Assembly: GCF_036365525.1 (NCBI RefSeq)
Contig: NW_027142279.1
Coordinates: 186,152 to 250,000, forward strand
Reading direction: 5' to 3'
DNA length: 63,849 nt
From: Heterodontus francisci
Taxonomy: Eukaryota
Below the pieces are notes generated by a model. It did no database searches. It was given only the letters and a program-made list of their open reading frames with translations, and had not been told where the DNA came from. Below, piece by piece: positions 1 through 61,691 of this stretch (positions are counted from its first letter, which is position 1; each line of letters starts with the position of its first letter). The position numbers and the translations under genes are program-made.

Positions 1-2880
1 AGGCAGAGAGACAGTGGGAAAGACAGAGACAGGGAGAGAGAGAAGCAGAGACAGAGACAGAGAGACACACAGAGAAATAGAAAAACAGAGACAGAGACAG
101 ACAGAAAAGGAGAGAAATAAAGTGAGATAGACAGAGACAGAGACGGAGACAGAGAGAAAGAGAGACACGGACAGAGAGATAGAGAGAAAGACAGAGACAG
201 AGGGAGAGACACATACACAGAGAAATAGAGATAGAGAGAGAGACTGAAAGAGAGACAGGAAGAGAAATAGAGACAGAGAGATTGACAGAGGCAGAGAGAG
301 ACACACAGATAGACATGGAAACAGAGACAGAGAGAAAAGGAGAAAGAGAGACAGACAGACAGACAGAGTAAGACAGACAGAGAAAGACAGGCAGAGACAG
401 TGAGAGAGACACAGAACGAGAGAAAGAGAGAAAGACAGAGACAGAGAGAGGCAGAGAGACAGCGCGAAAGACAGAGAGAAAGAGAGAAAGCGATTGAGAG
501 AGACAGAGAGAGACGAGATAGAGAGACAGAGATAGACAGTGACAGAGAGACAGAAACAGAGAGAAAGAGAGGCAGAGACAGGGAAAGCCAGAGACAGAAA
601 GACAGAGAGACAGAGCGAAAGAGAGACTAAGAGAGAGAGAAACAAAGAGAGAGACAGAGAGACAAGGGGAGAGAGAGAGACAGAGACAGGAAGAGAGATA
701 GAGACAAATGTGTGACAGATCGAGAGAGGCAGAGACAACGGGAAAGACAGAGACAGTGAATGAGAGAGAGTGAGGCAGAGAGAGACAGAAACAGAGAGAC
801 AGAAACAGAGACAGAGAGAAAAGGAGAGAAAGAGAGAGACACATGCAGAGAGNNNNNNNNNNNNNNNNNNNNNNNNNNNNNNNNNNNNNNNNNNNNNNNN
901 NNNNNNNNNNNNNNNNNNNNNNNNNNNNNNNNNNNNNNNNNNNNNNNNNNNNNNNNNNNNNNNNNNNNNNNNNNNNNNNNNNNNNNNNNNNNNNNNNNNN
1001 NNNNNNNNNNNNNNNNNNNNNNNNNNNNAGAACAGGAGAGATAGAGAGAGACACATAAAGAGAGAGACTCATGGTCAAAGAGAGAGCGACTGAGAGAGAG
1101 ACACTGAGTGAGAGAGAGACAGGATAGGCAGGAGAGAGAAAGAGAGAGAGGCAGAAAGACAGTGCGAAAGACAGAGACAGTGAGAGAGAGAAGCAGAGAC
1201 AGAGACAGAGAGACACACATAGAGACAGGGAAACAGAGACAGAGNNNNNNNNNNNNNNNNNNNNNNNNNNNNNNNNNNNNNNNNNNNNNNNNNNNNNNNN
1301 NNNNNNNNNNNNNNNNNNNNNNNNNNNNNNNNNNNNNNNNNNNNNNNNNNNNNNNNNNNNNNNNNNNNNNNNNNNNNNNNNNNNNNNNNNNNNNNNNNNN
1401 NNNNNNNNNNNNNNNNNNNNNNNNNNNNNNNNNNNNNNNNNNNNNNNNNNNNNNNNNNNNNNNNNNNNNNNNNNNNNNNNNNNNNNNNNNNNATGCAAAC
1501 TGAGACAGAGAGAAAAGGAGAAAGAGAGACAGACAGACAGACAGACAGAGAAAGACAGACAGAGAAAGACATGCAGAGACAGTGAGAGAGACACAGACCG
1601 AGAGAAAGAGAGACAGAGAGTGGCAGGGAGACAGTGGGAAAGACAGAGAGAAAGAAAGAGATTGAGAGATTCAGAGAGAAACGAGATAGAGAGACAGAGA
1701 GAGACAGTGACAGAGAGACGGAAACANNNNNNNNNNNNNNNNNNNNNNNNNNNNNNNNNNNNNNNNNNNNNNNNNNNNNNNNNNNNNNNNNNNNNNNNNN
1801 NNNNNNNNNNNNNNNNNNNNNNNNNNNNNNNNNNNNNNNNNNNNNNNNNNNNNNNNNNNNNNNNNNNNNNNNNACGGAGAGAGAGACACACACACACATA
1901 CACACAGAGACAGAACGAGAGAGAGGCAGAAAGACAGCGGGAAAGTGAGTGAGTGAGAGAGACAGAGACAGTGAGTCAGAGACAGAGAGACACACTGAGA
2001 GGCAGAGAAACGGAGACAGTGAGAAAAGGAGAGAAAGGAAGAGAGAGAGAGATAGAGAACGAGAGACAGAGACACAGAGAGAGTTAGACACAAACAGAGA
2101 GAAAGACAGAGACACAGAGTGGCAGAGAGACAGAGGGAAAGACAGCGACAGAGAGAGAGAGACAGAGATTGAGAGAGACAGACAGAAAGAGAGACAGNNN
2201 NNNNNNNNNNNNNNNNNNNNNNNNNNNNNNNNNNNNNNNNNNNNNNNNNNNNNNNNNNNNNNNNNNNNNNNNNNNNNNNNNNNNNNNNNNNNNNNNNNNN
2301 NNNNNNNNNNNNNNNNNNNNNNNNNNNNNNNNNNNNNNNNNNNNNNNNNNNNNNNNNNNNNNNNNNGGGAAAGACAGAGACAGTGAGAAAGAGAGACAGA
2401 AAGAAACAGAGATAGAGACAGGCAGAGAAAGAGGGACAGAGACAGAGAGACAGAGATAAAAGGGGTAAGACAGAGATGGAGATAAGAAGAGAATGAGAGA
2501 CAGAGAGAGACACACAGAGACAGAGAGAGAGAGAGGTAGAAAGAAAGAAATCGAGAAAGGGACAGCCAGAAATAGAGACAGACAGAGACAGAGACAAGGC
2601 GAGAAAGAGAGACAGAGCTAGAGTGTGCCATAGTGAGAGAGGCAGAGAGAGAGACAGAGAGAAAGAGAAAAACAGAGATACAGCGAGAGACAGGAAGAGA
2701 AAGAGAGACCGAAAGAGAGAGAGAGACAGTCAGAGAGAAAGAGTCAGATAGATAGAGATAGAGAGAGACTAGGAGAGAGAGAAAGAGAGACAGAGACAGA
2801 CAGAGAGAAACACAGGGACAGAGAGAGAGACGGGGTGGGGGTGAGAGAGGAGAGAGAGACAGGGAGAGAAAGAGAGACAG
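1..2880. repeat. GA/GACA-rich low-complexity repeat with N gaps
   Basis: Degenerate (GA)n/(GACA)n; the ER/LS-rich ORFs here are repeat artefacts. Confidence 0.95.
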
Positions 2881-3009
2881 AAGCCTGGATGCAATGCACA
2901 AATCTCAGAGTGAAGAAGTTTCTCCCACTTTATGTTCTTGGTGTGATATGAAAACTGTGTTTTATGCACAAATAATTGAAGTTATTTTTCTCTTTTAAAT
3001 TTCTTGCCG

Positions 3010-3027
3010 GCCTATGTGAAGGGAAAG
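3010..3027 (+). CDS. Candidate connecting-peptide exon (xLCEGK) of a second TCR-beta-like C gene; acceptor reads CG instead of AG
   Basis: Pyrimidine tract ttctcttttaaatttcttgccg|GC CTA TGT GAA GGG AAA G|gtgagg; 18 nt, phase 1-1, contains Cys, like TRBC exon 2. Confidence 0.6.
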
Positions 3028-3060
3028 GTGAGGACTTCCAATATTTTATCTGTTTGCTAT

Positions 3061-3062
<2 letters not shown>

Positions 3063-3135
<73 letters not shown>

Positions 3136-3136
3136 C
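3063..3136. repeat. (CT)n(CA)n microsatellite
   Basis: Direct reading. Confidence 0.95.
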
Positions 3137-3206
3137 TCACGGAATGTACATAATGATTAAGTTGGATTTTAGGGCGTGACTATGGTCTTTCTTGTCTGTC
3201 TTTCAG

Positions 3207-3316
3207 TGGAGCGGACACAGAGGCAACAGATTGTGGCAAGAGCTACTTACACTTCACTCATCTCCAAGAGCTTCCTGCATATGGCAGTGATCACCATCGT
3301 GCTGATCAAGGGGAAG
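3207..3316 (+). CDS. Transmembrane exon of a divergent TCR-beta-like constant gene: (V)ERTQRQQIVARATYTSLISKSFLHMAVITIVLIKGK
   Basis: ttgtctgtctttcag| acceptor and AAG|gtatga donor; phase 1 in, phase 0 out like TRBC exon 3; ungapped 11/36 identity to the TRBC TM exon, including TY..LI.KS with the intramembrane Lys. Confidence 0.8.
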
Positions 3317-3569
3317 GTATGAGAATTACCAGGAAACTTTGCTGAAGTGTAAAACGGACCCACTTCTCTATTCTGTAAACTTCAATCCTCTCCAGGTTTT
3401 AGGCCTCAGTGAGGCACATTCCCCAGACATAGGGTGAATCACTGAACCCAGTCCATGTCACTGTGCATGTGAATCGACAGTGAAACCACACTATTAGCAC
3501 CACTGTCTCGACTGCAATCCATCTAGATCCTGCACCAAGGGGTCCTGAATCGCCCCTACCCTCTCACAT

Positions 3570-4296
3570 GAGGACAGAATGAGCGATAGAGAAGGATAAT
3601 GAGAGAGATGTACCTATAGAGTAATAGAGAGAGTGTGAGGGGTGGAGGGACAGAGAGCGAGAAAGAAAAAGACAGAGAGAGATATACAGAAAGAGAGACA
3701 AAGAGCAAGAGTGACAAAACCAGTGAGGGAAATGCTGAGACAGTTGGAGACAGTGAGAGAAAGGGATAGCTAAGGATAAGTTGTGTGTGTGAGAGAGAGT
3801 GAGAGATAAAAAGAGAGAGAGATGGATAAACATAGAGTGACAGATACAGAGAGATAGAGAGAGAGTCTGGGGAGATAAAATGAGAGAGAAAGGCAATTCG
3901 ACAGAAATAAAGTGAAATTGAGATACGAGGGATAAACAGAGAGAGAGTGTGTCTGTATTACATACATTAAAAAGAAACAGTTTTGGGCAATGAAAGAGAG
4001 ACAGGGTGAGAAAGGAAGATTGAGGCAGACAGAGAGAGGAAGAGAAAGAGAGAGAGAGAGAAGCATTTAAGGGAAAGACAGACAGACACAGAGACACAGA
4101 GAGAGGGAGACAGGAACAGACAGAGAGAGAACCTAAGAGAGAGAAATAGACAGAGAGAACATGCGGGAGAGACAGTGATAGTGGGAGAGACAGGAAGAGA
4201 GAGGGAGAGAGAGGAGAGTACAAAGGAGAGGCAGAGTGACACAGAGACACAGACAGAGAAAGGAACACATAGACAAAAAGAAAGAAAGCGAGAGAC

Positions 4297-4343
<47 letters not shown>

Positions 4344-4370
4344 AGCGTTTAAGGGAGACAGAGAGAGAGC
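3570..4370. repeat. GA-rich low-complexity repeat
   Basis: Degenerate (GA)n. Confidence 0.9.
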
Positions 4371-4625
4371 CCTACTCCCCCACCCTTTCCTCATCACCTT
4401 GCAAAATTTACTCTTTCAAGTCTTAATCCAATTGTCTACTTTTTCAGGCATTGCTTTCCAGATGACAGCAACGCTCTGAGTTTAAGAAAAACTCACCCTT
4501 TCCTCTGGATCTTTTTAAATGCCATGAAATGTGTTTCCACTGACTCGAAATCCTTCCCAGGGCATTGTGTAAGAAATATTCCATGACTGACTCAATCTTT
4601 TTCCTTCCTTTTTTTCCCCTTCCAG

Positions 4626-4658
4626 ATTTCGGGAAAGTTGACGAAAAGTTTCGATTAA
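4626..4658 (+). CDS. Cytoplasmic-tail exon of the TCR-beta-like gene: ISGKLTKSFD*
   Basis: Long pyrimidine tract ending ccttccag|; phase-0 reading ends KSFD-stop versus KRFD-stop in TRBC exon 4; ATTAAA at 4848-4853. Confidence 0.75.
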   Translation: MSGKLTKSFD

Positions 4659-5519
4659 CTAAGCCGGGGCCAAAAACTCTGCAACAGGGCACTCGTCACA
4701 ACATATCCTGAAAAAATATAGGAAAGGAGGAGGAGGCTATTGGGTCATATCCCTATCATTGATATGTTGTCATTTTCTATTGGTTAATAACAGTTTGGCA
4801 ACTGGCAAAACCCATTAGGTCTTTTAGAGGATTTGGATTATAACATAATTAAAATTTATGTCTCAATTTCTATTCAATTCATTTAACCACTTGTCAGCTG
4901 GTTAGCTGAGCTGGTTAAGCTACTTTAACTAGTTGAGATGTCTCCTGTCCATCTTTGACCCGTTTGCACACTGAGCTTTATTTCTTTAAGTTGAGCTTCT
5001 TCATGATGCACCCTTCTCTCTCTTGTGACATCAAGCAGGCTAATAGAAAGATCTGTGGAAATGATACGCTGTGGTTTTAACTCTGCTTTTCGCACCTTTA
5101 CACAACATTTCACCAGGCATTGCAGTTCGCCAGCTCGCAGGAGAAAATACAAAACAGATACTGAGCTGAAAACAACATGAGAAACACACAGCAGGAACAG
5201 AGTCGAAAGGGGCTCCTGAGGATGGGAGGAAATAACACGGCGGGCACATCAGCATTTTGGAGGAGTTTAGGATGGAGGGTCAATAGGGAATGTTAACAAG
5301 GGATGCTGGGTGGGTGCCCAGCACAGCTTTTTGTTTGACCGACTGGCTTGCCCAGTCATTTCAGAGTCAGCCACATTGTTGCAGGAATGGAGTCACCTTT
5401 TAGGCCAGGCCGGTTAAAGATGACAGATTTCCTACTCTCAGTGAGAGATGGGTTTTTCAGGCAATCCAGTAGTTTCATGCTCACCATGACTGAGACCAGC
5501 TTTTTATCATTTTTTAAAT

Positions 5520-5912
5520 TCGTTCATAGGATGTGGGCGTCGCTGGCCAGGCCAGCATTTATTGCCCATCTCTAATTGCCCTTGAGAAGGTGGTGGTGAG
5601 CTGCCTTCTTGAACCACTGCAGTCCATGTGTGGTAGTTACATCCACAGTGCTGTTAGGAAGGGAGTTCCAGGATTTTGACCCAGCGACAGTGAAGGAACG
5701 GCGATATAGTTCCAAGTCAGGATGGTGTGTGACTTGGAGGGGAGCTTGCAGGTGGTGGTGTCCCGATGCATCTGCTGCCCTTGTCATTCTAGTTGGTAGA
5801 GGTCGCGAGTTTGGAAGGTGCTGTCTAAGGAGACTTTGTGCATTGCTACAGTGCATCTTGTAGATGGTACACACTGCTGCCACTGTGTGTCGGTGGTGGA
5901 GGGAGTGAATGT
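5520..5912 (-). mobile_element. CR1-like LINE 3' fragment
   Basis: ORF2 C-terminal-like SWNSLP..FKKAAHHHLLKG; related copy at 60815-61350. Confidence 0.75.
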
Positions 5913-7136
5913 TTATCTAACTAAGTGAACTTACATTATCCACCTTGCTGGGATTCAAATTCACGTCACCAAGTTATTAGCCCAGGCCTTTAGATTACTA
6001 GCCCAGTAACGTAACACTTTGCGACCTTACACTTCAACCTTCTTTTGAGCCTCAGTCCTAGGAGTGGAAAATACAAATGTGGGCGTGTTTCTACGTGTGA
6101 TTCACTCACTGTTAAACCCACACACCAGCCTGTTTTTCTTTCTTAAGCTGTTTAAACGTTTGCAGCTGCACTCTGATAACCGCACATCCTGACTGCGTGT
6201 TTCCTGTCTCTGTGTCTCTCTGTATAATTCGATTCTGCTGCTGTGTTGTTCTGACAAAGTCTTTCCACAAAAACACATGGAAAGAAAGCAGGACAGAGAA
6301 ATTTGCAGGTAGTTAGGGCGACGAATTGAATTAACAGGGGAGATAGGAGGAGTTGCACGAGCTGGGTTGATCTTGCAGAGAGCTGGAATTGACTCGATGG
6401 GCCAAATGGCCTCCTTCTGTACTGTAACCAGTCTCTGATTCTATGATAGATTCCCTGTGGTCGGAGAATCTGAAAATATATTTGATCAGTCAATCAAGTG
6501 TGAAGGAAATGCAACACCCAACATGTTTACATTGCTGACTCTTTATTCCCTCAGGTATAGAAGATTAAACGGTGATCTGACTGAGGTGTTTAAAATGACT
6601 GAATGTGTTGATAGAATAGATAGAGATAAACTATATCCTGTTGTTGGGGGCGGGGCACGGGGGCAGAACAAGTTGGTTTAAACCCAAACATCGAGCCAGG
6701 CTATTCAGGAGTGATGTCAGGAAGCATTTCTTCACACAAAGGGGCGTGGAAATCTGTTTCCTGTGTGCAGATTAGTGTTTGTAAGGTCAATAAAATTTTG
6801 CACGAATGGTGTGGTAGTGATTCCTTTAGAAGAACAACACTTCATCTTTAAGACAAGCAGTTAAACTATAAATGCATGTGCCAGAGCAGCATTTACCCCC
6901 ACATCACGGTATTGTTTTTCATTACACCTCTGTTCATTNNNNNNNNNNNNNNNNNNNNNNNNNNNNNNNNNNNNNNNNNNNNNNNNNNNNNNNNNNNNNN
7001 NNNNNNNNNNNNNNNNNNNNNNNNNNNNNNNNNNNNNNNNNNNNNNNNNNNNNNNNNNNNNNNNNNNNNNNNNNNNNNNNNNNNNNNNNNNNNNNNNNNN
7101 NNNNNNNNNNNNNNNNNNNNNNNNNNNNNNNNNNNN

Positions 7137-8010
7137 CTGTCTATGGCTATCTAATTATCTGTCTGTCTACCTATTTCACTCTCTATATAGAATCTTTATC
7201 CATCAATATTTATCTACAAATCTATCTGTTGATCCCTCTGTCTATCTATTCTCTAAACCACCTGTAGAACTCCCAATTCATTTCTTTCACTCTCTCTATC
7301 CAGTTATTTATCTATCTGTCTAGCCATCTCTCTATCAATCTGTCTATCTATTTCTCTATCTATTGATCCCTTTATCCAACTGTATCTCTATCTATCTTAT
7401 ATGCCTATATATATATCTGTACCTGCATTGCTCGATCTTTCTATTTAGTTCTCTATCATTATCTACCCACATATCACTCTATCTATCTATTGCTCTCTCC
7501 ATCCATCACTTTCTTCCTTTATATCCAACTATCTACCTATCCATTTATTCCAACAGTTCATCTATCCATTTATTCATAACTTTCTTTAACTAACTATTTA
7601 CCCATCACTCTGTCTATCTATTGATACCTCTATCCATCTATTTCGTTATATCCATCTATCTCTTCATCTCGATTTCTCTCCCTGTATCTCCCTCTCTATC
7701 TATTGATATCTCTATCTATTGACTTTTCTGTCCATCTATATCTCCTATATGTCTATATAGGTCTATATGATCTGATCTGATATGCCTATATATGTCTCTA
7801 GAGATCGATCTTTCTATCTAACGCCCTATCTCTCTATTTGTATCTATCTATCTACCACTTTATCAATTGATGTCTCCATACAACTCTCTTTATATCTATC
7901 AATAGCTTTCTATATTTATATCTATCTATCAATCCCTTTCTACCTATCAGTCAATCCTTGTCTATCTATCCATCTAACTCTCTATCCGTCTATCCATCTA
8001 TCTATCTATT
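7137..8010. repeat. Degenerate (TCTA)n repeat
   Basis: Direct reading. Confidence 0.9.
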
Positions 8011-8639
8011 TTTCTGTGCACCAGATTGACATTGGACTCTCATTGACAGGACCTGCATATAAGATCACAGACAGCAGGTGGCAGCAGAGATCAACATTTC
8101 ATCCAATTCCATCATCCTGAGCTCCAGTGAGAAAGACAGGATGGAGGAAGGACAGGGGGCAGGAAAAAAGAAAGTTTGTTTGGGTGAAAAAGGGGGAAAA
8201 AAGAGATTGAAAGAACGTGACGAGAAAAGAGAGAAGAACTGCAAGAGAAATCCAAGGAAGGAGAAGAGTTTAGGAAAAAGGGGGCGGGAAGGAATGAGAA
8301 AGTAGAGAAAGAAAAAGAGAAGGGAAAGAAAATGGAGAGAAGAAATCAGAACAAGAAAGAAAGACAGAGAGGAAGAGAGATAGAGAGAAAGAAAGATAAA
8401 CAATGAAGGAGAGGAGTAGATTGAAAGGAATGACAAAAGATAGAAAATTGGTCGATACAATAACAGAAAGTTTGATTGGATGAAATAAAAAAATTGATGG
8501 AAGAGAAGAATTAAAGAAAGGATAAAAGAATGATGGGGAGGAAGAAAGATAATTAAAATAAGGAACTGAATACTGAAAGCATAACTAAATGAATGATATA
8601 AAAATGCTGAAGAAGGAAATTCAGCTGCAATAGGCATCA

Positions 8640-9010
8640 CAGACTTTGCTGCACTGACCCAGCAGCCACATTTCCTCTGCATGGAGGGGGCAGGTGCACG
8701 GGGCCCAGAGACAGCGTCTCACCCAGTAGGAAATGAGACAAACATGGGCTCAATCTGCCAGCCTCTGAGCGGAGAGCACAGCAACAATAACAGGTGGCAC
8801 TTTCCGTTAAACCACAGGGTGAAACTCGGGCGCAATGACCTACTTTACAAACCGTGCAGCGCGCCTGCATGCAGAAAGCTGAGCTGCACCATTTGAAAGT
8901 TCACATCCCACGGCCTCCGTTTGATATCTTTCCGTGCAGCTGCACAATGTTATATTCCAGCTCCAGTCTTGTTTTGAGTTAATATTTTCCGGAGGAAATG
9001 ACACTGTAAC
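8640..9010. promoter_or_regulatory. Candidate TCR-beta enhancer (E-beta-like)
   Basis: Unique sequence between repeats with ETS-RUNX-like composite GAGGAAATGTGGC (minus, ~8665-8677), E-boxes CAGGTG (8691, 8791) and CAGCTG (8937), RUNX AACCACA (8810), ETS GAGGAA (~8992); lies 3' of TRBC as mammalian E-beta does. Confidence 0.45.
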
Positions 9011-10149
9011 CGAATTTTAAAGTCACAGCTCATTATCGCTCCGGTTCACTCAAGCAGACAATCACTTTAACAAGCCAAATCTTTACCCACATACAGTATG
9101 TAAGATTTCAGTGAACGTTTGGCCGACTCTGCTCTGTCTCATTGATATTTTCCAGTGTTACTGCTGAAATTTTGCATTTAGGGTTGTTTTTTTTTATATA
9201 TGGAGAATTGGAACGGGGAGTGAGCAAGTACTGGGAAAAAAGGGGAAGGGATGTGATTCGAGACCAGATTGTGTGTGTGAGAGAAAGAGCTAGGGAGAGC
9301 TGGGGAGAGAGACAAAGAGAGAGAGAGGGTGAGGGGAAGAGGGGGCAAGGGAGCGAGAGAGAGAGATAAACAAACAGAGGGGGCAAGATATGGAGAGAGA
9401 GAAAGACAGAGGGAAAGAGAGGGGAAGGGATGGAGAGAGAGAAAGACAGAGGGAAAGAGAAGGGAAGCGATGGAGAGAGAGAAAGACAGAGGGAAAGAGA
9501 GGGGAAGGGATGGAGAGAGACAAATAGACAGACAGGATAGAATATGGAGAGAAAGACAGGCAGCGAGAGAGAGAGAGAGGGTTACAGAGAGACAGAAAGG
9601 CAGACAATGAAAAATACTGAGGAGACAGCAACTTGGAAAACGGTAAGCGAGGTGATAGAGAGGGAGGGGGAGGGGAGAGAGAGAGACAAACGTGGTGAGT
9701 GATGGGGAATTAAGCAGGCAGCGCACAGGAAGAGGGAGAAATGAGATAGAAAGGAAAAGATGTAGGGGAATGGCTGTATAAGAGATACAGAGAGAAAGAA
9801 GGGATAAATGAAAGATACAGGGAGAGAAAAATAGAAAGAGAGAGGGAGAATGATAGTGGGGAATAGAAAAGGAGAGAAAGATGCAGGGCATAGAGAAAGG
9901 CAGGGGACGTATAGAGACAGAGAACTGGTGAGATAGAGAGACCAGGAGCTAGAATAGTGGGTAGATAGAGCTGACAAAAAAGAGTTTCCGATTACCAAAA
10001 ATGCAACGCTTGTAGCCTTCTAAAGCTGGTTTAAAGATTGACTCGATATCTACGTACATCAATCAGCCTGATAATGAAGGTATCTTTCAATGTCTGTAGC
10101 CAGTGAGAATGTGTTCATATTCCTGAGATGCAGGTCAGTGTGCACTGTT

Positions 10150-11699: not shown

Positions 11700-12473
11700 T
11701 CTTAACCAGTGAACAAGAAAAGAAAAAAAATGTAGAAGATCACAAGCGAGCTGTCGATACTGGATCCACTGAGAACCCCACGACAAATAATGGACAATTA
11801 TGAGCGCATTTTCCATCTGCAATCGATGAGGTGTCTGATACAAATAGTAATAACATTTCTGCATTAACAGAAAAGGGAAAAAAGACATTAATAGTTGCAC
11901 TAAACAGAACTTGAAGTTACAATTTGTTTACTACTGCTTAATATTATACACAGCTTTACGAGAATTGCACGGAATGAGGGACTTAAGTTTCATGGAGAGA
12001 TCAGCAAAGCTGGAATTGATCGCCTTGGCATTAACAACTGGCTTTTTCAAAGAGCTAGCACTTGCACGATGGGCCAAGTGGCCTCCTTTCGTCCTGTAAG
12101 GTTGTATGTTTCTTTATAACATTTCAAACAACACAGACTAACAATTAATAAACAGACAAAATAAACTGGAAAAAAAGTTTGCACGTTTCTCAAAGCTTCA
12201 CCTACTGAGACAACAGGAATTTAATACATTGACGAGAATATGAAAGGACTTATTCTAGTGGAAAAGACAGAGTGGGTCTTAAAATTTCCTCTGTTCGTTT
12301 CCCGCAGTGGTGATGGGTATTTAGGGTTGTCCGCCAAAGTTACGCGAGTACAGCGGGAGTGGTTTAGACGAAATTCACCCCCGAGATATTCACAATAATC
12401 GTATTTTCTCTCCCCTTGCTCCCTCGTGTGTTCTGCTGCTTATCCATCTTTTGAGTTCATTAATTTGCGACGA

Positions 12474-12500
12474 TCAGTCAAACCTTTTGCTGTAAGACGT
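12474..12500 (-). CDS. TRBC: TCR beta constant exon 4 (cytoplasmic tail) TSYSKRFD*
   Basis: tatcatataccag|ACG TCT TAC AGC AAA AGG TTT GAC TGA; phase 0 matches exon 3. Confidence 0.9.
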   Translation of the reverse strand, partial: TSYSKRFD

Positions 12501-12539
12501 CTGGTATATGATAAAAAAAAGAGGGCGTTATTATCGTCA

Positions 12540-13080
12540 TGGAATTATGGACTGATACAGAACAGAAGGAGGCCATTCGTCCCGCGTGCCTATACTGGCA
12601 TTTTGAAAGAGCTGTCCATTTAGTCCCATTTCACAGTTCTTTCCCCTATAGCCCTGAGACTATTCCCTCCCCCACTACCTCAACCCCCTCAAACAAGTAT
12701 TCATCCAATTCCCTCTTGAAAGTTACTACTGAATCAGCTTCCACCGCCCTTTCAGCCAGTGCATTCTCAACCACAACAACTCGCTGGCTCAAAATATATT
12801 TCTCACCTGCCCCTCTGCTCCCTTGGCTAATCACCTTACAGCTGTGTCCTTGGTTGGGCAATCCTGCTGCCTCTTTGAAGCTGTTACCCCATTCGTTGTC
12901 CTATCCAAACCCTTCATCATTGTGCACACCTCTATTAAATCTCTCCTTAACCTTCCCTGATCCAAGGAGAACAATCCCAACGTCCGTATTCTCCTCACAT
13001 CACTGAGGTCCCTCAACCCTGATACCGTTCAAGTAAATCGCCCCTTCACCCTCTCCAATGACTCGACATCAGTGTCCTGA
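12540..13080 (-). mobile_element. CR1/HER LINE 3' fragment
   Basis: LGLFSLDQGRLRRDLIEV and FKRELDEYL motifs. Confidence 0.8.
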
Positions 13081-13445
13081 CCAGATCATCATGTGCATGA
13101 ATAATCGAGACGAACCATGCACATGCTCTTTCCTGCTCATGCATTCCTAACCTTGCATATAAAGTCTTGTAAAATCACAATAAGTTCAATTATTTTCCAA
13201 GGGAAATTCCAGAACATTGACAATTGTATTCAACTGGATTAAATTGGTTGGTTAGTGTTGTGGGCGCAGGAATGAATGGAAAGTGAATTGGTGTATTCCA
13301 TCTGCGTGCAACAGGAATGCAAAACGTGGGCTCGTGAATATCGGATAGTCACTCGTAATTTCAGTCTGGAATTCAGGAGAAACTTCTTTACCCAGTTTCA
13401 CCATTACAATACCTATGTTAAGAACTTCAGTAACTTTAATCTTAC

Positions 13446-13552
13446 CTTAGTTTTCCAAGCAATTGTTGAGATGAAAATTGCATAAAAGATGCTTTTGCAG
13501 ATGAGGATCAGGTATGTCAGTTTTGCTGTTGCCATGCTTTGGATTTTCGCCT
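13446..13552 (-). CDS. TRBC: TCR beta constant exon 3 (transmembrane) EAKIQSMATAKLTYLILICKSIFYAIFISTIAWKTK
   Basis: ttttacag| and AAG|gtaag splice sites; conserved Y..L..K...Y TCR-beta TM motif. Confidence 0.95.
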
Positions 13553-14354
13553 CTGTAAAATAAATGTAACAGAAAATGTTGCAATCTCTGTTCTCTCAAG
13601 GCAAGAAATGCTACTGCGTGAAAATGTAATGTGTGTCAGTGAAGGAGCCCAATGTAAGGGTCGAGCTGCGAAAGCAGAACTGATCTCCCTTTGACGCAAG
13701 GAGCCCTGGGGTATTCCTTACTACAAATGGAGTTCAGCAATATGGCCGATCTGAATTGGGGCCGCTGTAACTTATGTGTCAGCTATGGCTCACGTATGTA
13801 TCAGCTCGAGCTGAGTGGGTAACGCTCTCCTGTCTGAGTCGTACGATTGTGGGTTCAAGACCCAGTCCAAAGACATGAACCCCATAATCCAGACTGACTC
13901 TCCCAGTGCCAGTAGACAGCGTGTGTGCTGCACTGCAACTTTGGAGGAACCTTCTTTGAGATGATGTGTTAAACTAATTTAACCTCTGGGAAGTGGAACT
14001 GTCCCTTTTATCTCCACGCCAGATTCACACTATGAACTCCCAAGGAATTGTACGTTTTAAGACAAGTGTACACAGCTCCCTCCCCTCCCATCCCCAGGCG
14101 TCCCCTCTCCCTCATCACAGGGCAACATATTTCCCTGAGGTCGTGAACCCAAGAGGACCGTGAGGTTATATCATTCGACTCGGCTGGTCTCGAAATTCCA
14201 ACGGCCTTTCCCTCCCAGAGGAGTTTTCTCATAAACTCGTTGTGCATGATAGTATGTATAACTGTAAAACTACAGCTTGGAAATGTTGAAATGAGAATAT
14301 ACATGAAGTGTCTGACACAGTAATAATTCCAGAATTATTGGTGAATATTTTTTG

Positions 14355-14900
14355 AGTCATGGAGTCATTACAGCACAGAAAGAGGTCATTCGGCCCATCG
14401 AGTCCATGCAGGATCTCTACAGAGCAATCCAATCAGTCCAGCTCTCCAATTCCATCTCCATTGCCCTGCAAGTTAATTACCCTCAACAGTACGTCCAGTT
14501 TCCTTATGAAATCATTCATTATCTCCATTTCCACCACCCTCGTAGACAGTGACTTCCAGGTCATTACCACTCGCTGCATAAAACACTTCTGCCTTACATC
14601 CCCCCCCGCCCCCCCCCCCAGTGCATCTTTTTCCCAAAGCCTGAAAACTGTGACCCCCCCCCAATCCTTATGCCAGCAACTCATGGGGACAACTTTTCTT
14701 TGTCTACCTATTGTCAACCTGTCATAATCTTGTACAACTCTGTCAAATAGCCCCTCAATCTCCTGTTCTCCAAGGAGAACAACCCAGGTTCTCCAATGTA
14801 ACTTTGTAGCTAAAATTCCTCATCTCTGGAACCATTGTGGTAAATCTCCTCTGCACCCTCTCAAGGACCTTCACCTCCTTTACAAAGTGTGGAGACCAGA
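14355..14900 (-). mobile_element. CR1/HER LINE 3' fragment
   Basis: WSPHF..LERVQRRFT and QRVVMTWKSL motifs. Confidence 0.8.
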
Positions 14901-14927
14901 TACAGATAGAAGCAGATAGATATTCAC

Positions 14928-14948
14928 CTTTACTTATACCGCACATTT
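14928..14948 (-). CDS. TRBC: TCR beta constant exon 2 (connecting peptide) EMCGISK
   Basis: ttcttttcccag|AA ATG TGC GGT ATA AGT AAA G|gtgaat; 21 nt with the interchain Cys. Confidence 0.9.
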
Positions 14949-15267
14949 CTGGGAAAAGAAAGAGAAATCAATAAACATTCAGCATCAGAATATTTTATGA
15001 AATCACTGTGTAAATGTAGATTATCACAATTGAGTCCCGCACTGTAGTCTAATATATTGAGAGTCATTTTAATTGAGTGTTTAACCATATCTTCCCCTTT
15101 ACACGACAATATTGTTCTATTTCATGAATTATTTATTTATTTATTGACTTACTGATACATCTACTTGCTTATTCGTACTTTCATAAGAGCACAGGTGCTA
15201 TATAAATGCAACTTTTGATTTCTTTGAAGCTGAAATAAAATGGTATTGGTCTCACTAGTGTGCCTAC

Positions 15268-50000: not shown

Positions 50001-50715
50001 GATGAGGAATGTCGATGATAAGTGGCAGTAACTTGATTGCTAACCAGATGATCAAAATTGGGTAAAATTTGTGATAAACACAACAATGGTCAGTTTAAAC
50101 GGTACAGGGTGATATTCTAAGACAATAAGATGTATCTATCCATCGGAACTTTGATAGTTCTGTCTTTCAGCAGAACCAAGCCATCTATTTATCACTTTAA
50201 GAGCTGCTTGCAAGCTGAAAGATAGAGATGCAGACTCACACAGACAATACCAGCACAGCTGAAGAGATTTTTCTTTTAACTTGTTGAGTTATTTTGATCA
50301 GGAATGCGATGCCTGAAAGGATGGAGGAAGCAGATTCAGCAGTAACTTGGAAAGGAGATTGGGAAATATATTTGAACAGGAAATATCTGCCTCCCATTGA
50401 GGAAAGAGCAGGAGAGTGGGATGAAATAAGTAGATCTTCCGAAGTGATGGCACAGGAACGATGGGCCGAATTGCCTCCTCTGTCCTGTATGATTGTCCAA
50501 TTCTTTGCAGATTATTTCATCTGCTTTGGAAAGTACTGAAGTGTGGAACTGGATTTTGAGCTGTCTCTCTGGGAGCACTGAGAAACTATTGGATTATTTC
50601 AACACTCTGAAAGTTGATGGAAAACTCTGCAAAGTTTCATCAATGAACAGCTGTCTTTATGAGCTCTGCTTCCTTGAGTTTTCCTCTCTAACACTCACAG
50701 TATAAGAGGGTGGTA

Positions 50716-51416
50716 TGTTTTTGACGCAGCCCTGCTCCTGTTTGAATCACTGTGATCACTAGCAGCACAGTAATACACCGCCCTGTCAGTCTGATCCACC
50801 CTCAGTATTTTCAGGCTGCAGGTTTTAAGATCAGGTCTGATGGCTTTAAATCTCTCCTTGAAACCCTCTTCAGGCGTTGAATCAGAGGTACCAACCGAGG
50901 TCACTATGAGCTGCAACCCTGCTCCGCTGTGCTGGCGATACCAGTACATGTAACTGTCGTCGGTGTCATTCTGGAAACAGTGCATTTCCGCCGTTTTCCC
51001 CTCTGCGACCGTCAGCCGGTTCCCCCACTGGGTAATGAGAGCGCTCCTGGACCGGGCTGTGGAGGAACAAGAGAAACAGATTGGGTCAAAGAGAACAGAC
51101 ACAATGAGGAGAGAGAGAGAGATTTAATGGTGAACCTCCCGATGCACACCACAGTCGATCAGCTCGCTGACGCCCCAGCACAGGGGTCATGTGCTGATTC
51201 CCAGAATCGCTGGGCACAACTGCAGTGGCGCTAAATAGCGACACTTGTCCTCAACAGTAAAACCAAACCAGTAAATCTCTAACTGATTGGAGCCCTTTGA
51301 TATCAACAGGAATTGTGTCTCAAAGCTGATTAACTGGGGCCTGAATTTCCCTCCAAGTAGGAGCAGTAACCTGGGAGCAGCAGAAACAGTAGATGGAGGT
51401 AAACAGTACACAGCAT
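50716..51416 (-). CDS. TRBV: TRBV gene (D-proximal): leader 51371-51416 MLCTVYLHLLFLLLP; V exon 50755-51056 ..ITQWG..MHC..MYWYRQ..AVYYCAASD; 23-RSS 50716-50754
   Basis: Canonical C/W/YYC; cacagtg-23-tcaaaaaca; phase-1 leader intron. Confidence 0.93.
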
Positions 51417-51699
51417 GATGCAGGAATGTGAACCCTTCTTTCAACCTTCCAGCTTGGTCCAGCTCTCACACACACTGCAGTCCTATTGGTGCACAGCCTG
51501 CTTTTGTGATGCAGTGTGGAAGTGACTCCATTGCAATGTCAACCAATAGAACTTCCCTTGTGTATCCAACAAAGAAGGTGGTTCTTTCACCTGTGTGGGT
51601 GCAGGAATTAGAATTACACAGGATTGACTTGCAAAGTCCCATCTATTGCAGGGTTTGGGGATGTTCATAAAGATTGAAATGATTGACATATATACCAAC

Positions 51700-52670
51700 T
51701 TGATTGTATTTTTCGAGGAGGTGACTTGATGTGTAGATGAGGGGGAAGTAGTTGATGTCGTCTACATGGAATTCAGTAAGGCTTTTGATAAAGCCCCACA
51801 AGAGAGATTGGTTAAGAAGCTAAGAGCACATGGGATCCAGGGCAATTTGGTAAATTGGATTCAAAATTGGCTTATTGGCAGGAGGCAGAGGGTAAAGGTC
51901 GAGGGTTGTTTTTGCGAGTGGGACCCTGGGTGGTTGATGGTCGGCGCAGACTCGGTGGGCCGAAGGGCCTGTTTCGGTGCTGTAACTCTAATCTAATCTA
52001 ATCTAATCTAATAATCTGTGACCAATGGTGTACCACAGGGATCTGTGCTGGGCCCTTGCTGTTTCTGGTGCAAATTAATGATTTTGATGTGAATATAGCA
52101 GGTATTAAATATAAGTTCGCAGACAACATGAAAATTGTTGACGTTGTAAATAGTGAAGAGGGAAGCCTTAGATTTCAGGACGATATGGATGTACAGTTCT
52201 GGGCACCACACTATAGGAAAGATGTGATTGCACTGGAGAGGGTCTAGAGGAGATTCACCAGGATGTTGCATGGGATGGAACATTTCAGCTATGATGAGAG
52301 ACTGAAAAGGCTAGGGTTGTTTTATACCCAGCAGAGGAGGCTGAGGGGGGACCTGATTGAGGTATACAAAATTGTGAGGTGCACTGATAGGTCAGATAGG
52401 AAGATTTTTTTCCCTTTATAGGAGGGGCAATAACCAGGGCATAGATTTAAGGTAAGAGGCAGGAGGTTTAGAGGGAATTTGAGGAAAAAAAATTTCAACC
52501 AGAGGGTGGTTGGAATCTGGAACGCTCTGCTAAAAGAGGTGGTAGAGGCAGGAAGCATCACAACATTTAAGAAATATTTAGATGAGCACTTGAAACGCCA
52601 TAGCATACAAGACTACGGGCCAAATGCTGGAAAATGGGGCGAGAATATTTAGGTGCTTGATGGCCGGCAC
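51700..52670 (+). mobile_element. CR1 LINE RT fragments, interrupted at ~51930-52012 by a LINE/SINE 3' tail with (TCTAA)n
   Basis: EFSKAFDK..LVNWIQNWL..; KFADNMK; QFWAPHYRKDV. Confidence 0.85.
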
Positions 52671-53769
52671 TATTCGGTGGATGGGTCAATTCACTGCTGC
52701 ATTGCTTGCTCAGTCTTTTCAGAAGCAAGTGGGACTCAGGCTGCGGTGGAGCTCCATCCCCACCTCCTGGCTGTAACGTGTAACTACAGGCACCTGCGAT
52801 TTGCACATTGCAATTGATAAAATAGGCATTATGAAGACATGCTTTGCAATTGCTCCATCTTCCTCATTTTTATCCATTGCTTCAGCTGGTGACGCTGGTG
52901 ACATCGTATTAGATAGAATTTACAGCACATATTCAGGCTCGTCGGCCCGATGGGCCCATGTTTCAGACTAGTCTGGGGCAGATGGCGGTGTAGTTGTCAT
53001 GTCACTGAGCTGGTAATCCAGAGGCCGGGGGGTGGTGGTGGGGGTGGGGGGAGGCGGATTCTCCAGGGGACATGCGTTCGAATCCCACCAGGTCAGATGG
53101 CAGCATTTAAATTCTGAATCTAAGGAATTCTGGAAAATCATAGCCAGCGCCTCCACTATCTATGCAGCTATCTCTTTTAGAAATCAAGTATGTAATCCAT
53201 CTGTTCCAGGGGACTTGTCAGATTTTAAGCCCTGAAGTTTCTCCAAGACTTTTTCTCAATTGATATGAATATCCTTAATTTCCTCACTCTTCTTAGCCCC
53301 CACATTACTGTCTATTTCTGGTATGGAACTTGTGTCTTCTACTGTGAAGACAGGCACAAAATATTAGTTCAATGCCCCTGCCATTTCCCCATTCCCCATG
53401 ATAATTATTCCTGTCTTTACCTCTAAGGGACCAACGTCAACTTTAGCTACTCTCTTGCTTTTTATGTAAAAGCTCCTACCATCTGTTTTTATATTGCTGG
53501 TTAGTTTATTCTCATATTTTATTCCAACATCCGATGAAAGAACAGAAACAATGTCTTCATCCAGCCCTATCAGTATGACGTGCTATTTCCTGCTGCCGAA
53601 TGTTTTTATCCAGCATCCATTTACATAAATCTTGTTGTGGGGAGTTAGAACATGGGAGTTCTGCGATTCGAACGGTCACTGAACAGATGCAGATCCGCAT
53701 CCGATCACCCAGGGCTGCTCTTCACCGAATGCTGGGTTAAATGCATCTGTTTGAAGGGAGACATGTGAG

Positions 53770-54117
53770 GGTTTTTGTCAAGGCAGCCAATGACTCTGAA
53801 CCGCTGTGTCCCATCAGCAGCTGCACAGAAATACACCGCCTCGTCTTTGGCGTTCACACTCTCGATCGTCAGAGTGGATTTCTTATTTTCCAGAGTCCTC
53901 GTGATTGCAAATCCGCTCTTAAATCCATCTTCATATTGAGGTTCACCTGCTGCTAATGTAAACCCGATTAACAGGAATCCTCTGCCGGGGGACTGACGAT
54001 ACCAGTACATGTAGTTGCGAACTGCTCCTTCCTGCAGACAGTTCATTTCCACGGGTCCAGGTTGTTTAACAGCCAGTGACTGAGGCCATTGATGTATCAC
54101 ATCACCCCGGCAAACAC
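53770..54117 (-). CDS. TRBV: TRBV exon 53809-54117 (..VIHQWPQ..MNC..MYWYRQ..AVYFCAAADG) with 23-RSS
   Basis: ctttctag| acceptor; cacagcg-23-acaaaaacc; candidate leader 54967-55024 appears to contain a stop. Confidence 0.9.
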
Positions 54118-55329
54118 CTAGAAAGAGAAATTAGAGGGAATGAACTGGTATCGATGGAGTTACAATTGCGACGATGGACGTCGGTGTTGCACCGAATTAA
54201 CGATGGAAATTCGGTCTGTGTCCTAATTTCCTGCAAGCATCTGGATCTGTAACAACTGTAAAATAGAATTGTGGAATCCACAAGCTTGCAAGTGGGTGCA
54301 AACATTAAAGAGTTAACATCATATTAATGGCACTTGTCTTCCCGAACTGGGGGACAGATGAATGAGTTCACTTTCTGATATGAAATAATCGATTACTGAT
54401 TTAACAAGTCACCGCCGCTCAGTTTTATTAAGATCATTAATCATCCCTTTCAATTATCAAATGTAGAAGAGTGATTGGGACAGAATGTTAACCTATTCAG
54501 CGCCAGAAGGGAAATAGCAAAGAGGATGAAACTGAAAGGCATGTTTGCGGTGGATCTGAGAGACTTTCTGCAGGTTACTCTGGGTTTTAAGGGAGGGAGA
54601 GAGATGAGGTGTTGGCAGAGCGGATCGTCATAAGAGGAAGTTATCTCAAGGCAATGATCCCCGCCCCTACCTTGAAGTTGTCCCCCATTCTTTTGCTTGC
54701 TTCTTTATGCCACCGTTTCCCTCTTTATTCTCTCCCCTTGCCTCCCCCCTCGTCACTTTCTGCTCCGCTGTAAATATCCTCATTCCTATCTCTTTGTGAG
54801 CTTGCTTTCACACCGAAGCCAGGTGATCTCTGAAGGTATCGAGGTGTTGGAGAAGGGGATTTGTCCCAATCCTTTCCCTCAGACAGCATAACGGCTCCCC
54901 ACACTCCTCCTTCCACCATTTCAGCTCTGCCCTTTAAACCCCCTTTTCACCCCTCTTCTCATGTACTTGTTAATATATGGAGGCAGCAGTGAAGAGAGAG
55001 GCGAGACAATCATTGACATGGCATTATTGATAACTCAAAATGAGTTGAACTCTTCTACATTTGCAGAGAGTAGGTCGACTAATCGATGTGAATGGTATGT
55101 CATTTATTTAACGTCATGAAGTAAAGAATAGAGGCAGGTAGGTTAGTGGATGATAGATCGATAGACAGGTTGCAGACAGGTGGATGAGTGAAATGTATGT
55201 ACAGATGCAGACAGACAGTTGTGTGTTTAGATAGACAGATTGATAAAGAGACATGCAAGGAGACAGACAGACTCACAGGCAGACAGAGAGACAGATCACT
55301 CTGCCACAGTTAATTCCTGTCTCCTTTGG

Positions 55330-56257
55330 GTTTTTTGTTGAACTGCTGTATTTCTCTGAGTCACTGTGTAAACTCCAGGCACAGTAATACACGGCTGAGT
55401 GATTCTCCCACAGGCCGGAGGACTCCAGGTAAAAGTGAGTGCTGTCAGGTCTCCTGGCGGTGAAACCGTCCACCTCACCGGAGGGGGTGACCATGTCGAT
55501 GTAGTTAGAATAGAAAAGGTCCTGAGGCTCACTGTCAGGGTGCCATCGGTACCAGTAGAAATACGAGTCAGCTGCTGCTTCAGTGCAAATGCACTCGTTG
55601 CTGACTGGAGATCCTGGGGAATGGGATATAGAAGGGGGAATCTGTTGGATCAGCACGGCTCCAACATCTGTAAAACACAAAGTGAGCAGAGAGGTGTTAA
55701 GAATGATACCCCATGAAGGGGCAAAGGAATGGAGAGGTGGGAGTATGTGTGAGAGAGAGACAGAGAGAGAGAGATTCGTGTTATAAAGACAGAAAAATAG
55801 AGAGGGAGAAAGAGTGAGTGAGAGAAAATGAGACATGCAGAAAGAGAGAGAGAGAGCATGACAGAAAGTTAAAGGTAAAACCAAGGGTAATCGATAGGAC
55901 AAAGAAAGGTAAAGAGTGAGAGAAAGAGAGAGAGAGAGAGAGAAGAAAGCAGACAAGGACAGAGAGAGTGAGAAACGGACAAAAGGAGAGTCAGACTAGA
56001 AAAAGAAAGAAAAAAGAGGATAGGGAGAGAGAAAGTGTGACAAAGAGAGGAAGAAAAAGAGAGAGATAGACCGAATGATATATAAACCGATGCAGAGAGA
56101 ATCTACACAGCCAAACGGTGTTAATAAACCTCGGAGGGGGTTAAACCCCAAAGGGGACATTCGGGGAAGGATCAGTGAGGATCACTGACATCTCCCAGTT
56201 CAGTTCCACCTTACCCCTTAACACCAGCAACACAACCCAGAGGTGAGACACAGTCAT
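55330..56257 (-). CDS. TRBV: TRBV gene: leader 56215-56257 MTVSHLWVVLLVLR; V exon 55369-55667 ..IQQIP..ECIC..FYWYRW..AVYYCAWSL; 23-RSS 55330-55368
   Basis: cacagtg-23-acaaaaaac; canonical splice sites. Confidence 0.92.
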
Positions 56258-59930: not shown

Positions 59931-60069
59931 GGAGTGATAGAGTGTGTGTGAAAGTGCCAAGGAATGAGCGAGAGACATAGTGCGAGATAGAATCAGAGAG
60001 GATGATATGGTGAAAAACAGATAGAGTAAAAGAGAGGCAGTGATAGAGATAGATGGAGAAAGGGAGAAA

Positions 60070-60394
60070 AAGATCTCTGTCTGTTTATCTATATAGCTAT
60101 CTATCTATCTCTGTAGCTATCTGTCTATCTTTATCTCTATCTATCCAGCTGCATGGCTGTGTGTCTGTCTGTCTATCTGTGTCAATTTGTCTTTCTATCT
60201 GTATGAATCCATCTGTCTGTCTTCATATCTACCTATCTTTTGTCTGTCTGTCTTCATATCGACCTATCTGCATATCTGTCTGTCTAACAATCTATTTGAC
60301 TATTTGTCCATCTATCTGTCTACCTATCTGTCTGTCTATCTATCAATCTGTCTACACATCTGTATTTCTATCTATCTATCTGCCTGACTGTCTG

Positions 60395-60466
<72 letters not shown>

Positions 60467-60510
60467 ATGTCTGCCTGTCTGCCTTCCTAGCTATCTATCT
60501 GCCTGTCTAT
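60070..60510. repeat. (TCTA/TCTG)n repeat
   Basis: Direct reading. Confidence 0.9.
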
Positions 60511-60814
60511 GCTGCCTATGGCATGGTACTGTACACCAGTTGGCTTCCGTGTTTTAAGTACACTGCTATCTGAAATTACCTAGCAAACCCTTCAGTTATC
60601 TACAAGGCAACACACACCTTCTCCAGGGCAATGAGTGATGTTGAATAACTACTGGCCTTCTCAGAGGGACCCAGCTCCCCAGAATGAATTTTAAAAAATC
60701 AAAGCAAGAGAAGAAGTTGCAGAGGATCTGACTATCATTTTCCAGTTCTTAATTGGCTGTTAACTGTTTTGGGGCGTCTTGAAGTCCTGGAAGACCTGAT
60801 ATAATTGTTTTTTC

Positions 60815-61350: not shown

Positions 61351-61691
61351 TCACAATGGTGATGTAAACTATCTGTCTTATTTACATCATTAATTAACCT
61401 TTTAATTAATCAAGTATAGGACAGAGACTGTGACTCAGTTTTAACATACTCAGTGCCAGAAATTAAACAGTGTAGACGAGGACTTTGAAATTTTGCAGGG
61501 GATCTGAGACACATCTCTCTCTTTCCTTCTCTCTCTTCCTCATACCTTCTGTCATTCCCTGTCATTCAGCCCTTGATGAAGGTTCTGGAATCCGGGAATC
61601 ACCAGCTTGGAAAACGGCCGGTGAGGCAGGGAGAGACATTAACCATTGTCACTGCTCCTGTATGTCAGTCAGTTGTTTTGTTCACCCTGTT

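What the first reader, a model, noticed from the sequence alone, without database searches (positions are those of the whole stretch)
3010..4853. Second, highly divergent TCR-beta-like constant gene lying tail-to-tail with TRBC
Seen in sequence: three plus-strand exons splice to xLCEGK-VERTQRQQIVARATYTSLISKSFLHMAVITIVLIKGK-ISGKLTKSFD*, followed by ATTAAA. They mirror TRBC exons 2-4 of this same window (EMCGISK-EAKIQSMATAKLTYLILICKSIFYAIFISTIAWKTK-TSYSKRFD*). Intron phases are identical (1,1,0). The TM exon aligns ungapped at 11/36 identity (E..A.+TY..LI.KS......I.....K.K). The Cys-to-Tyr distance is exactly 18 residues in both, because the CP exon is one codon shorter and the TM exon one codon longer. 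Both tails end K.FD-stop. Established knowledge: a single intramembrane Lys with Y..L..K and a separate cytoplasmic exon typify TCR-beta; the Lys mediates CD3 assembly. Inference: about 30% identity implies an old duplication, so this may be a distinct TCR chain or isotype rather than an allele. Its Ig-C exon and any own (V)DJ segments should lie left of the window or in the N gaps. If it has plus-strand D/J segments, the minus-strand TRBV genes could reach it by inversional recombination. I cannot confirm it is undescribed.
Basis: partly seen in the sequence, partly recalled or inferred. Interest (0 to 1): 0.92.

Follow-up and report, generated by a model that had tools for sequence, protein, structure and literature searches.

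The report
Transcribed second TCR-beta-like constant gene tail
Next to the horn shark's working T-cell receptor beta constant gene, on the opposite strand, lie the last exons of a second, very old and very different copy of that gene; it is still transcribed and spliced, but one of its splice sites is broken, so this copy may no longer make a proper receptor chain.

Summary
On the plus strand there is a hinge-Cys exon (3010-3027), a transmembrane exon (3207-3316) and a tail exon (4626-4658). They mirror exons 2-4 of the minus-strand TRBC in phases, lengths, Cys-to-Tyr spacing, the single membrane Lys and the K-x-F-D stop.

- **Similarity beats chance.** Shuffle p is about 2e-4. A profile of TRBC transmembrane exons ranks this stretch second of 2,597 six-frame peptides in the window (E = 0.002).
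- **Species.** The window is Heterodontus francisci (horn shark). Its TRBC Ig exon is 100% identical to the 1994 cDNA protein.
- **New here: the gene is expressed.** Contigs of two public runs carry the exact 3316/4626 GT..AG junction. They cover the transmembrane exon and about 430 nt of 3' UTR, but not the unique intron parts.
- **Against full function.** The Cys exon has CG where an AG acceptor is needed. An aromatic residue that is near-invariant in TRBC is His. No Ig-C exon lies in the window.

The scan has already noted the same inverted second-type cassette at other places in this genome. One copy was followed up and called a dead relic.

Verdict: these are real 3' exons of an anciently diverged TRBC paralogue, transcribed, and probably non-productive in this copy.

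The parts
3010..3027 (+). Hinge / interchain-Cys exon of the second-type constant gene (x-L-C-E-G-K, phase 1 to phase 1). It has a strong donor (AAAG|gtgagg) and a polypyrimidine tract, but CG instead of an AG acceptor at 3008-3009.
   Evidence: Its use in RNA is untested, because 18 nt is too short.
3028..3206 (+). Intron of 179 nt with a (CT)n microsatellite at 3063-3128. It ends in ...tttcag.
   Evidence: No contig depth on 2870-3139.
3207..3316 (+). Transmembrane exon (110 nt, 37 codons with the split first codon). It carries T-Y-x5-K with a single Lys. Best 19-residue Kyte-Doolittle mean is 1.76. His stands where TRBC has Tyr/Phe four residues after the Lys.
   Evidence: Covered by RNA-type contigs. 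One 140-nt contig lies on 3205-3316 with 28 further letters 5' that do not lie on the stretch.
3317..4625 (+). Intron of 1,309 nt (GT..AG), largely GA-rich repeat. It is removed in transcripts.
   Evidence: joint 3314->4624 with cut +2 (= 3316/4626), in 3 contigs of X1 and 1 of X2. No depth on 3410-3544. One low-depth unspliced contig lies on 4458-4648.
4626..4658 (+). Cytoplasmic-tail exon coding part (10 residues ending K-S-F-D) plus the TAA stop.
4659..5057 (+). 3' untranslated region as far as contigs reach. ATTAAA lies at 4848-4853, but contigs run on to about 5057.
   Evidence: (X2 contig 4624-5057 with 2 other letters; X1 contig 4840-4965)
12474..15618 (-). Comparator: the canonical (first-type) TRBC. 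Ig exon 15618-15268, Cys exon 14948-14928, TM exon 13552-13446, tail plus stop 12500-12474.

Best explanation
These are the last three exons (hinge-Cys, transmembrane, and cytoplasmic tail with 3' UTR) of a second, anciently diverged paralogue of the TCR beta constant gene. It belongs to a plus-strand cassette that converges tail-to-tail on the canonical minus-strand V-D-J-C cassette of the horn shark TRB region.

Shown: the exons are homologous to TRBC exons 2-4. The locus is transcribed on the plus strand. The TM-to-tail intron is removed exactly as predicted. The TM exon is also spliced at its 5' side to something outside 2870-3206, or to an exon too short to be laid.

Inferred: this copy is probably non-productive or at least aberrant. 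The Cys exon has lost its AG acceptor. If it is skipped, the message stays in frame (phase 1 to phase 1), but the chain would lack the interchain cysteine. The upstream Ig-C and J elements are reported damaged, which I could not check. The RNA would then be a spliced transcript of a decaying constant gene, as is common for germline J-C transcripts in antigen-receptor loci.
For: - Homology: shuffle p about 2e-4. Profile E = 0.002, rank 2 of 2,597. Same phases and near-equal exon lengths, the same Cys-Tyr and Tyr-Lys spacing, and the K-x-F-D stop.
- Position: 7.8 kb from the TRBC stop, on the opposite strand.
- Expression: GT..AG joint 3316/4626 in 4 contigs of 2 runs. Exons are covered and the unique intron parts are not. 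A contig with 0 other letters spans the 4625/4626 boundary unspliced at low depth, so this copy or an identical one is the template.
- Decay signs: CG acceptor. His at a position that is Tyr in 21 and Phe in 1 of 22 vertebrate TRBC sequences. No Ig-C exon within the 3 kb upstream that the window holds, which is GA-repeat with gaps.
- Leads, not support: scan notes s1-871925 and s1-872034.
Against: - All three exons keep open frames. The TM and tail exons keep canonical splice sites.
- The Cys, Tyr and Lys keep their exact spacing although nucleotide identity is only 43.5%. That points to long purifying selection and is compatible with a still-working gene.
- The CG acceptor could be an allele or an assembly error. 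No DNA run covered it.
- The runs are only guessed to be RNA.
- The lesions of the upstream J and C elements were not seen by me.
Confidence: 0.6

Rival explanations
1. This copy is a working gene for a distinct TCR-beta-like chain (a second isotype or fifth chain type). It would have its own plus-strand V, D and J segments left of the window. It is either spliced through a non-canonical or polymorphic acceptor, or made without the Cys exon.
For: Open frames, a conserved Lys/Tyr/Cys register, hydrophobic core 1.76 vs 1.99, and correct splicing with expression at contig depths of 28-516. More than one 3' UTR variant is expressed in X1 (other letters at 4687-4787). Scan notes place V, D, J and C elements to the left.
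Against: CG acceptor. His for the near-invariant aromatic residue. No protein with this TM exon was found in three large searches, although these were weak tests. Unchecked notes call the upstream J and C elements lesioned, and call another copy dead.
Confidence: 0.27
2. The exons are real but unrelated to TRBC. They would belong to a non-coding RNA or another membrane-protein gene, and the resemblance is chance.
For: BLASTP gives no pairwise alignment. Only 11/36 identities. The Ig-C exon is unseen. No hit in the PDB or in the representative library.
Against: The profile scan and the shuffles both reject chance. The phases, exon sizes, Cys-Tyr-Lys register and tail motif all match independently. 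The site is directly beside TRBC. The PDB test also failed for the true TRBC exon, so it is uninformative.
Confidence: 0.05
3. Assembly artefact: a misjoined or collapsed piece in a repeat-rich, gap-rich stretch gives a false tail-to-tail arrangement.
For: Four N gaps and GA-rich arrays lie directly upstream. The TRB region is multi-copy: near-identical TRBC proteins sit on different contigs.
Against: Sequence is continuous, without N, from 2367 to 6938, so it spans all three exons and 2.3 kb beyond. Contigs from independent runs match at 99-100%. The same arrangement is noted at other places of the genome.
Confidence: 0.03

Closest known systems
Canonical TCR beta constant gene (TRBC) of cartilaginous fishes, e.g. 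Heterodontus francisci 'T-cell receptor homolog' (P0001) and the TRBC of this window
   Same: Exons 2-4 share the layout and phases (1,1,0). Both have a short Cys exon, T-Y-x5-K with a single membrane Lys, an 8-10 residue tail ending K-x-F-D, and the same locus.
   Different: Only 9-13/36 identities in the TM exon, where first-type genes share 21-29/36 across elasmobranchs. His replaces the aromatic residue after the Lys, and the membrane-end Trp is absent. Orientation is opposite. The Cys exon has a CG acceptor. The Ig-C exon was not seen.
Squamate TRE (TCR epsilon), a diverged duplicate of the TRB locus (PMC11754216)
   Same: A TRB-derived, strongly diverged constant gene with a single-Lys TM and, by that paper, its own V, D and J segments. 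It is the precedent for calling such a duplicate a new chain.
   Different: TRE lies on another chromosome, is shown there to be transcribed with V regions, and is present across squamates. Here the gene sits tail-to-tail within the TRB region, and neither rearranged transcripts nor orthologues were shown.
Inverted duplicated TRB V-D-J-C loci of pike and salmonids (PMC10464911)
   Same: Two TRB cassettes in opposite orientation on one chromosome, each with its own constant gene.
   Different: In those fish the arrangement is head-to-head with the V genes in the middle. Here the arrangement is tail-to-tail, and the second constant gene is far more divergent than the first.
Inverted TRBV downstream of TRBC in amniotes (TRBV30 type; PMC11754216, PMC10464911)
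   Same: An opposite-strand antigen-receptor element lies just 3' of TRBC, so inversional joining is an established mechanism at this locus.
   Different: That element is a V segment. Here it is the 3' end of a constant gene.

Membership tests
TCR beta constant gene (TRBC) | Four-exon layout with intron phases 1,1,0 between Ig-C, Cys, TM and tail exons | tested here: met
   Phases 1/1/0 were read for exons 2-4 in both genes. The phase at the end of exon 1 could not be read, because that exon is outside the window.
TCR beta constant gene (TRBC) | Ig C1-set domain exon upstream | not testable with these tools
   The profile scan finds only the minus-strand TRBC Ig exon in the window.
TCR beta constant gene (TRBC) | Interchain Cys in a short, spliceable connecting-peptide exon | tested here: inconclusive
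   The Cys is present 18 residues before the TM Tyr, as in TRBC, with a strong donor. The acceptor reads CG, not AG. RNA could not show whether the exon is used.
TCR beta constant gene (TRBC) | Single Lys in the membrane span, with Tyr six residues before it | tested here: met
   T-Y-T-S-L-I-S-K vs T-Y-L-I-L-I-C-K. Hydrophobic core 1.76 vs 1.99.
TCR beta constant gene (TRBC) | Aromatic residue (Tyr) four residues after the membrane Lys | tested here: not met
   His in this gene. Tyr in 21 and Phe in 1 of 22 TRBC sequences from sharks to mammals.
TCR beta constant gene (TRBC) | Significant sequence similarity to TRBC TM exons | tested here: met
   Profile E = 0.002, rank 2 of 2,597. Shuffle p = 2e-4. 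BLASTP alone is negative.
TCR beta constant gene (TRBC) | Cartilaginous-fish tail motif K-R-F-D at the C-terminus | tested here: met
   The tail ends K-S-F-D-stop. 19 of the 22 cartilaginous-fish proteins with intact ends finish in K-R-F-D; the other three have one-residue variants (K-I-F-D, K-R-F-V).
TCR beta constant gene (TRBC) | Own D and J segments with recombination signals upstream, and rearranged V(D)J-C transcripts | not testable with these tools
   No plus-strand J in the window. Only unchecked notes place D, J and V elements to the left. Only one read-laying run was available.
Expressed gene | Spliced transcripts with the predicted junctions | tested here: met
   The 3316/4626 junction is in 4 contigs of 2 runs. 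The TM exon contig leaves the genome at 3205/3207. The 3027/3207 junction was not resolvable.
Pseudogene | Disabling lesion (stop, frameshift or lost splice site) | tested here: inconclusive
   There is one candidate lesion, the CG acceptor. There is no stop or frameshift in the three exons.

The most novel reading that the evidence does not exclude
Elasmobranchs carry a fifth, TRB-derived T-cell receptor chain type, encoded by plus-strand V-D-J-C cassettes that converge on each canonical TRB cassette. In the horn shark at least one copy is still expressed. Loss of the Cys-exon acceptor would then give, by in-frame exon skipping, a chain without the interchain disulfide rather than a dead gene.
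Probability: 0.15. Interest if true: 0.8.

Novelty: new variant of a known kind. Interest (0 to 1): 0.5.

Why it matters
Jawed vertebrates are usually credited with four TCR chains. Extra chains, such as marsupial TCR mu and squamate TCR epsilon, changed views of how T-cell recognition diversifies.

A beta-like constant gene as far from shark TRBC as shark TRBC is from bony-fish TRBC, kept beside each TRB cassette and still transcribed, raises two possibilities. The TRB locus may have been a convergent pair of cassettes early in shark history. Alternatively, sharks may have, or recently had, a second beta-type chain.

For this particular copy the practical value is smaller. It supplies exact exon coordinates and a confirmed splice junction. 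These make RACE, in situ hybridisation and cross-species searches straightforward.

Tried and rejected
- **Representative-library search with the TM exon.** No hit. 37 residues against 1.8 billion proteins has little power.
- **The search for homologous proteins with the TM exon.** With the 41-aa stop-free stretch it found no candidate, and only proteins of 23-72 aa were in reach.
- **Alignment A2, a Mustelus TRBC plus the TM exon.** 29 hits, all first-type TRBC. No second-type protein was recovered.
- **TRBC Ig exon search.** Gave the species and 15 first-type proteins only.
- **PDB phmmer.** No hit, even for the genuine TRBC TM exon, so it is uninformative.
- **BLASTP of the two TM exons.** No alignment.
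- **ESM Atlas.** No usable hit.
- **Ten paper searches.** No open paper describes a second or inverted TRBC in sharks. Pettinello et al. 2017 is not held.
- N stretches were left as they are.
- **Alternative acceptor for the Cys exon, rejected.** The AG at 2980-2981 would make the polypyrimidine tract coding and change the phase to 0 (read).

Full report
**What is there.** I read 1-6000 on the plus strand and 12200-15100 on the minus strand and located every peptide of the finding by six-frame search.

The plus strand carries three exon-like pieces.
- 3010-3027 reads x-L-C-E-G-K, followed by a strong donor (AAAG|gtgagg).
- 3207-3316 has a ...tttcag acceptor and a GT donor, and codes 37 residues including the split first codon.
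- 4626-4655 has a ...ccttccag acceptor and codes 10 residues. TAA follows at 4656-4658, and the only ATTAAA or AATAAA within 650 nt lies at 4848.

The canonical TRBC lies on the minus strand.
- Ig exon 15618-15268
- Cys exon 14948-14928
- TM exon 13552-13446
- tail 12500-12474

Both genes have intron phases 1,1,0. The Cys exon is one codon shorter and the TM exon one codon longer in the plus-strand gene. The Cys-to-Tyr distance is therefore 18 residues in both. Tyr-x5-Lys is kept, and both tails end K-x-F-D-stop. The stop codons are 7.8 kb apart, tail to tail.

**Is it more than chance?** BLASTP of the two TM exons alone finds nothing. The best ungapped alignment (score 40, 11 identities) was reached by 1 of 5,000 shuffles of the same residues.

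For an unbiased test I built a profile from the TM exons of 16 cartilaginous-fish TRBC proteins. I scored all 2,597 stop-free peptides of the six frames of the window with it.
- The true TRBC exon scored 1.5e-24.
- The stretch 3173-3319(+) came second at E = 0.002.
- Everything else was at 0.03 or worse.

MAFFT places the exon in the same register on a Mustelus TRBC. Together with the independent matches of phase, exon size, residue register, tail motif and position, I take homology to TRBC exons 2-4 as established (about 0.9).

**Species and comparators.** The Ig exon of the minus-strand TRBC is 100% identical to the 'T-cell receptor homolog' of Heterodontus francisci, and 99% identical to two NCBI proteins of that species on other contigs. 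The window is therefore horn shark, and TRBC is multi-copy.

All 34 proteins fetched are first-type. Their C-termini are almost invariant from sharks to a sawfish.

| TM exon comparison | Identities of 36 |
|---|---|
| Window's first-type TRBC vs other elasmobranchs | 21-29 |
| Second-type vs elasmobranch first-type | 9-13 |
| Second-type vs salamander | 8 |
| Second-type vs teleosts | 4-9 |
| First-type vs salamander or teleosts (three of four; the fourth is off register at 1) | 10-14 |

Nucleotide identity of the two TM exons is 43.5%, with no excess at any codon position. The split is therefore old or the gene evolved fast. With 36 residues I cannot date it.

**Expression.** One search for runs returned four small contig sets of one organism. 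I laid them on 2870-6900. They behave like RNA.
- There is depth on 3140-3409 and on 4625-5029.
- There is none on the unique intron parts 2870-3139 and 3410-3544.
- A joint 3314->4624, GT..AG with cut +2, is exactly 3316/4626. It is in three contigs of X1 and one of X2.

A 140-nt X2 contig lies with letters 29-140 on 3205-3316, and its first 28 letters lie nowhere on the stretch. So the TM exon is also spliced at its 5' side.

A 434-nt contig covers 4624-5057 with 2 other letters. A low-depth contig with no other letters crosses 4625/4626 unspliced, so this copy or an identical one is a template. Variant letters at 4687-4787 in X1 show that more than one allele or paralogue is expressed.

Limits:
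- The runs are only guessed to be RNA.
- All three holders of the joint come from one sample.
- Contigs give no level or strand other than the GT..AG sense.
- The 18-nt Cys exon is too short to be laid, so the 3027/3207 junction is untested. The 2-nt overlap at 3205-3206 fits an upstream exon ending in AG. Both the Cys exon and a TRBC-type Ig exon end that way, so it does not discriminate.

**Signs of decay.** Positions 3008-3009 read CG where the acceptor AG should be, behind a good polypyrimidine tract. The only upstream AG (2980-2981) would turn the tract into coding sequence and change the phase.

The residue four positions after the membrane Lys is His. It is Tyr in 21 and Phe in 1 of 22 TRBC sequences from sharks to mammals.

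The window has no plus-strand Ig-C exon or J segment. Upstream of 2870 there are only GA-rich arrays with four N gaps, which I left untouched.

Against decay:
- The three exons are open.
- The TM core is hydrophobic enough (1.76 vs 1.99).
- The functional register of Cys, Tyr and Lys has survived near-saturating divergence.
- Skipping the 18-nt exon keeps the frame.

**Earlier notes of this scan** (leads only).
- The same inverted second-type cassette is noted about 176 kb before and 188 kb after this window, and on another piece.
- A follow-up on that other piece called it a dead relic that is still intact in catsharks and the whale shark.
- Notes on the window to the left place V genes, a D segment and 'lesioned' J and C elements 2-30 kb before position 1.
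- One note on this window flags the CG acceptor and the Tyr-to-His change, which I confirmed.
- I could not confirm the catshark and whale shark claim.

**Reading.** These are the 3' exons of an anciently diverged TRBC paralogue in a convergent cassette. It is transcribed and correctly spliced at TM-to-tail. This copy is probably non-productive (0.6). The main rival is that it still works (0.27).

Within the papers held I found no description of such a gene in sharks. The nearest precedents are squamate TRE (PMC11754216) and the inverted TRB loci of pike and salmonids (PMC10464911).

Noticed in passing
window 20044-40218, minus strand: Nineteen J-beta segments (F-G-x-G plus GT donor), all on the minus strand. 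Near-identical pairs lie about 9.3 kb apart (for example 30915/40218, 29855/39211, 30494/39928, 28269/37654), which suggests an internal duplication of the J cluster. One J (27449-27423) has an in-frame stop.
   Followed up: partly
window 15745-15713, minus strand: A J-like remnant (Y-S-G-V-G-T-K-L-T-A-L) lies only 95 nt 5' of the TRBC Ig exon. It has Ser for the Phe of F-G-x-G and no GT donor.
   Followed up: no
window 5435-5974 and 6380-6784: Contig depths of 1e4 to 8e5 in all four runs, with many internal joints and variants. These are very high-copy, expressed repeat elements (SINE-like) between the two constant genes.
   Followed up: no
window 1-2870, 3560-4340, about 8000-9900: Long GA-rich arrays of imperfect GAGAGACAGA-type units, purine-rich on the plus strand. 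Four N gaps sit in the first array. They fill the presumed Ig-C-to-Cys intron and most of the TM-to-tail intron of the second-type gene.
   Followed up: no
window 13446-13552 (minus) vs proteins P0001-P0003: The window's TRBC has Ala where the 1994 cDNA and one NCBI protein have Thr in the TM (F-Y-A-I-F vs F-Y-T-I-F). It has Thr where two NCBI proteins have Ala in the Ig exon. So there are several near-identical TRBC copies or alleles in the horn shark.
   Followed up: partly
window 50698-63848, minus strand: At least five TRBV-like exons, all on the minus strand: 51123-50698, 54130-53708, 55995-55276, 62054-61668, and a cut one at 63848-63720.
   Followed up: no
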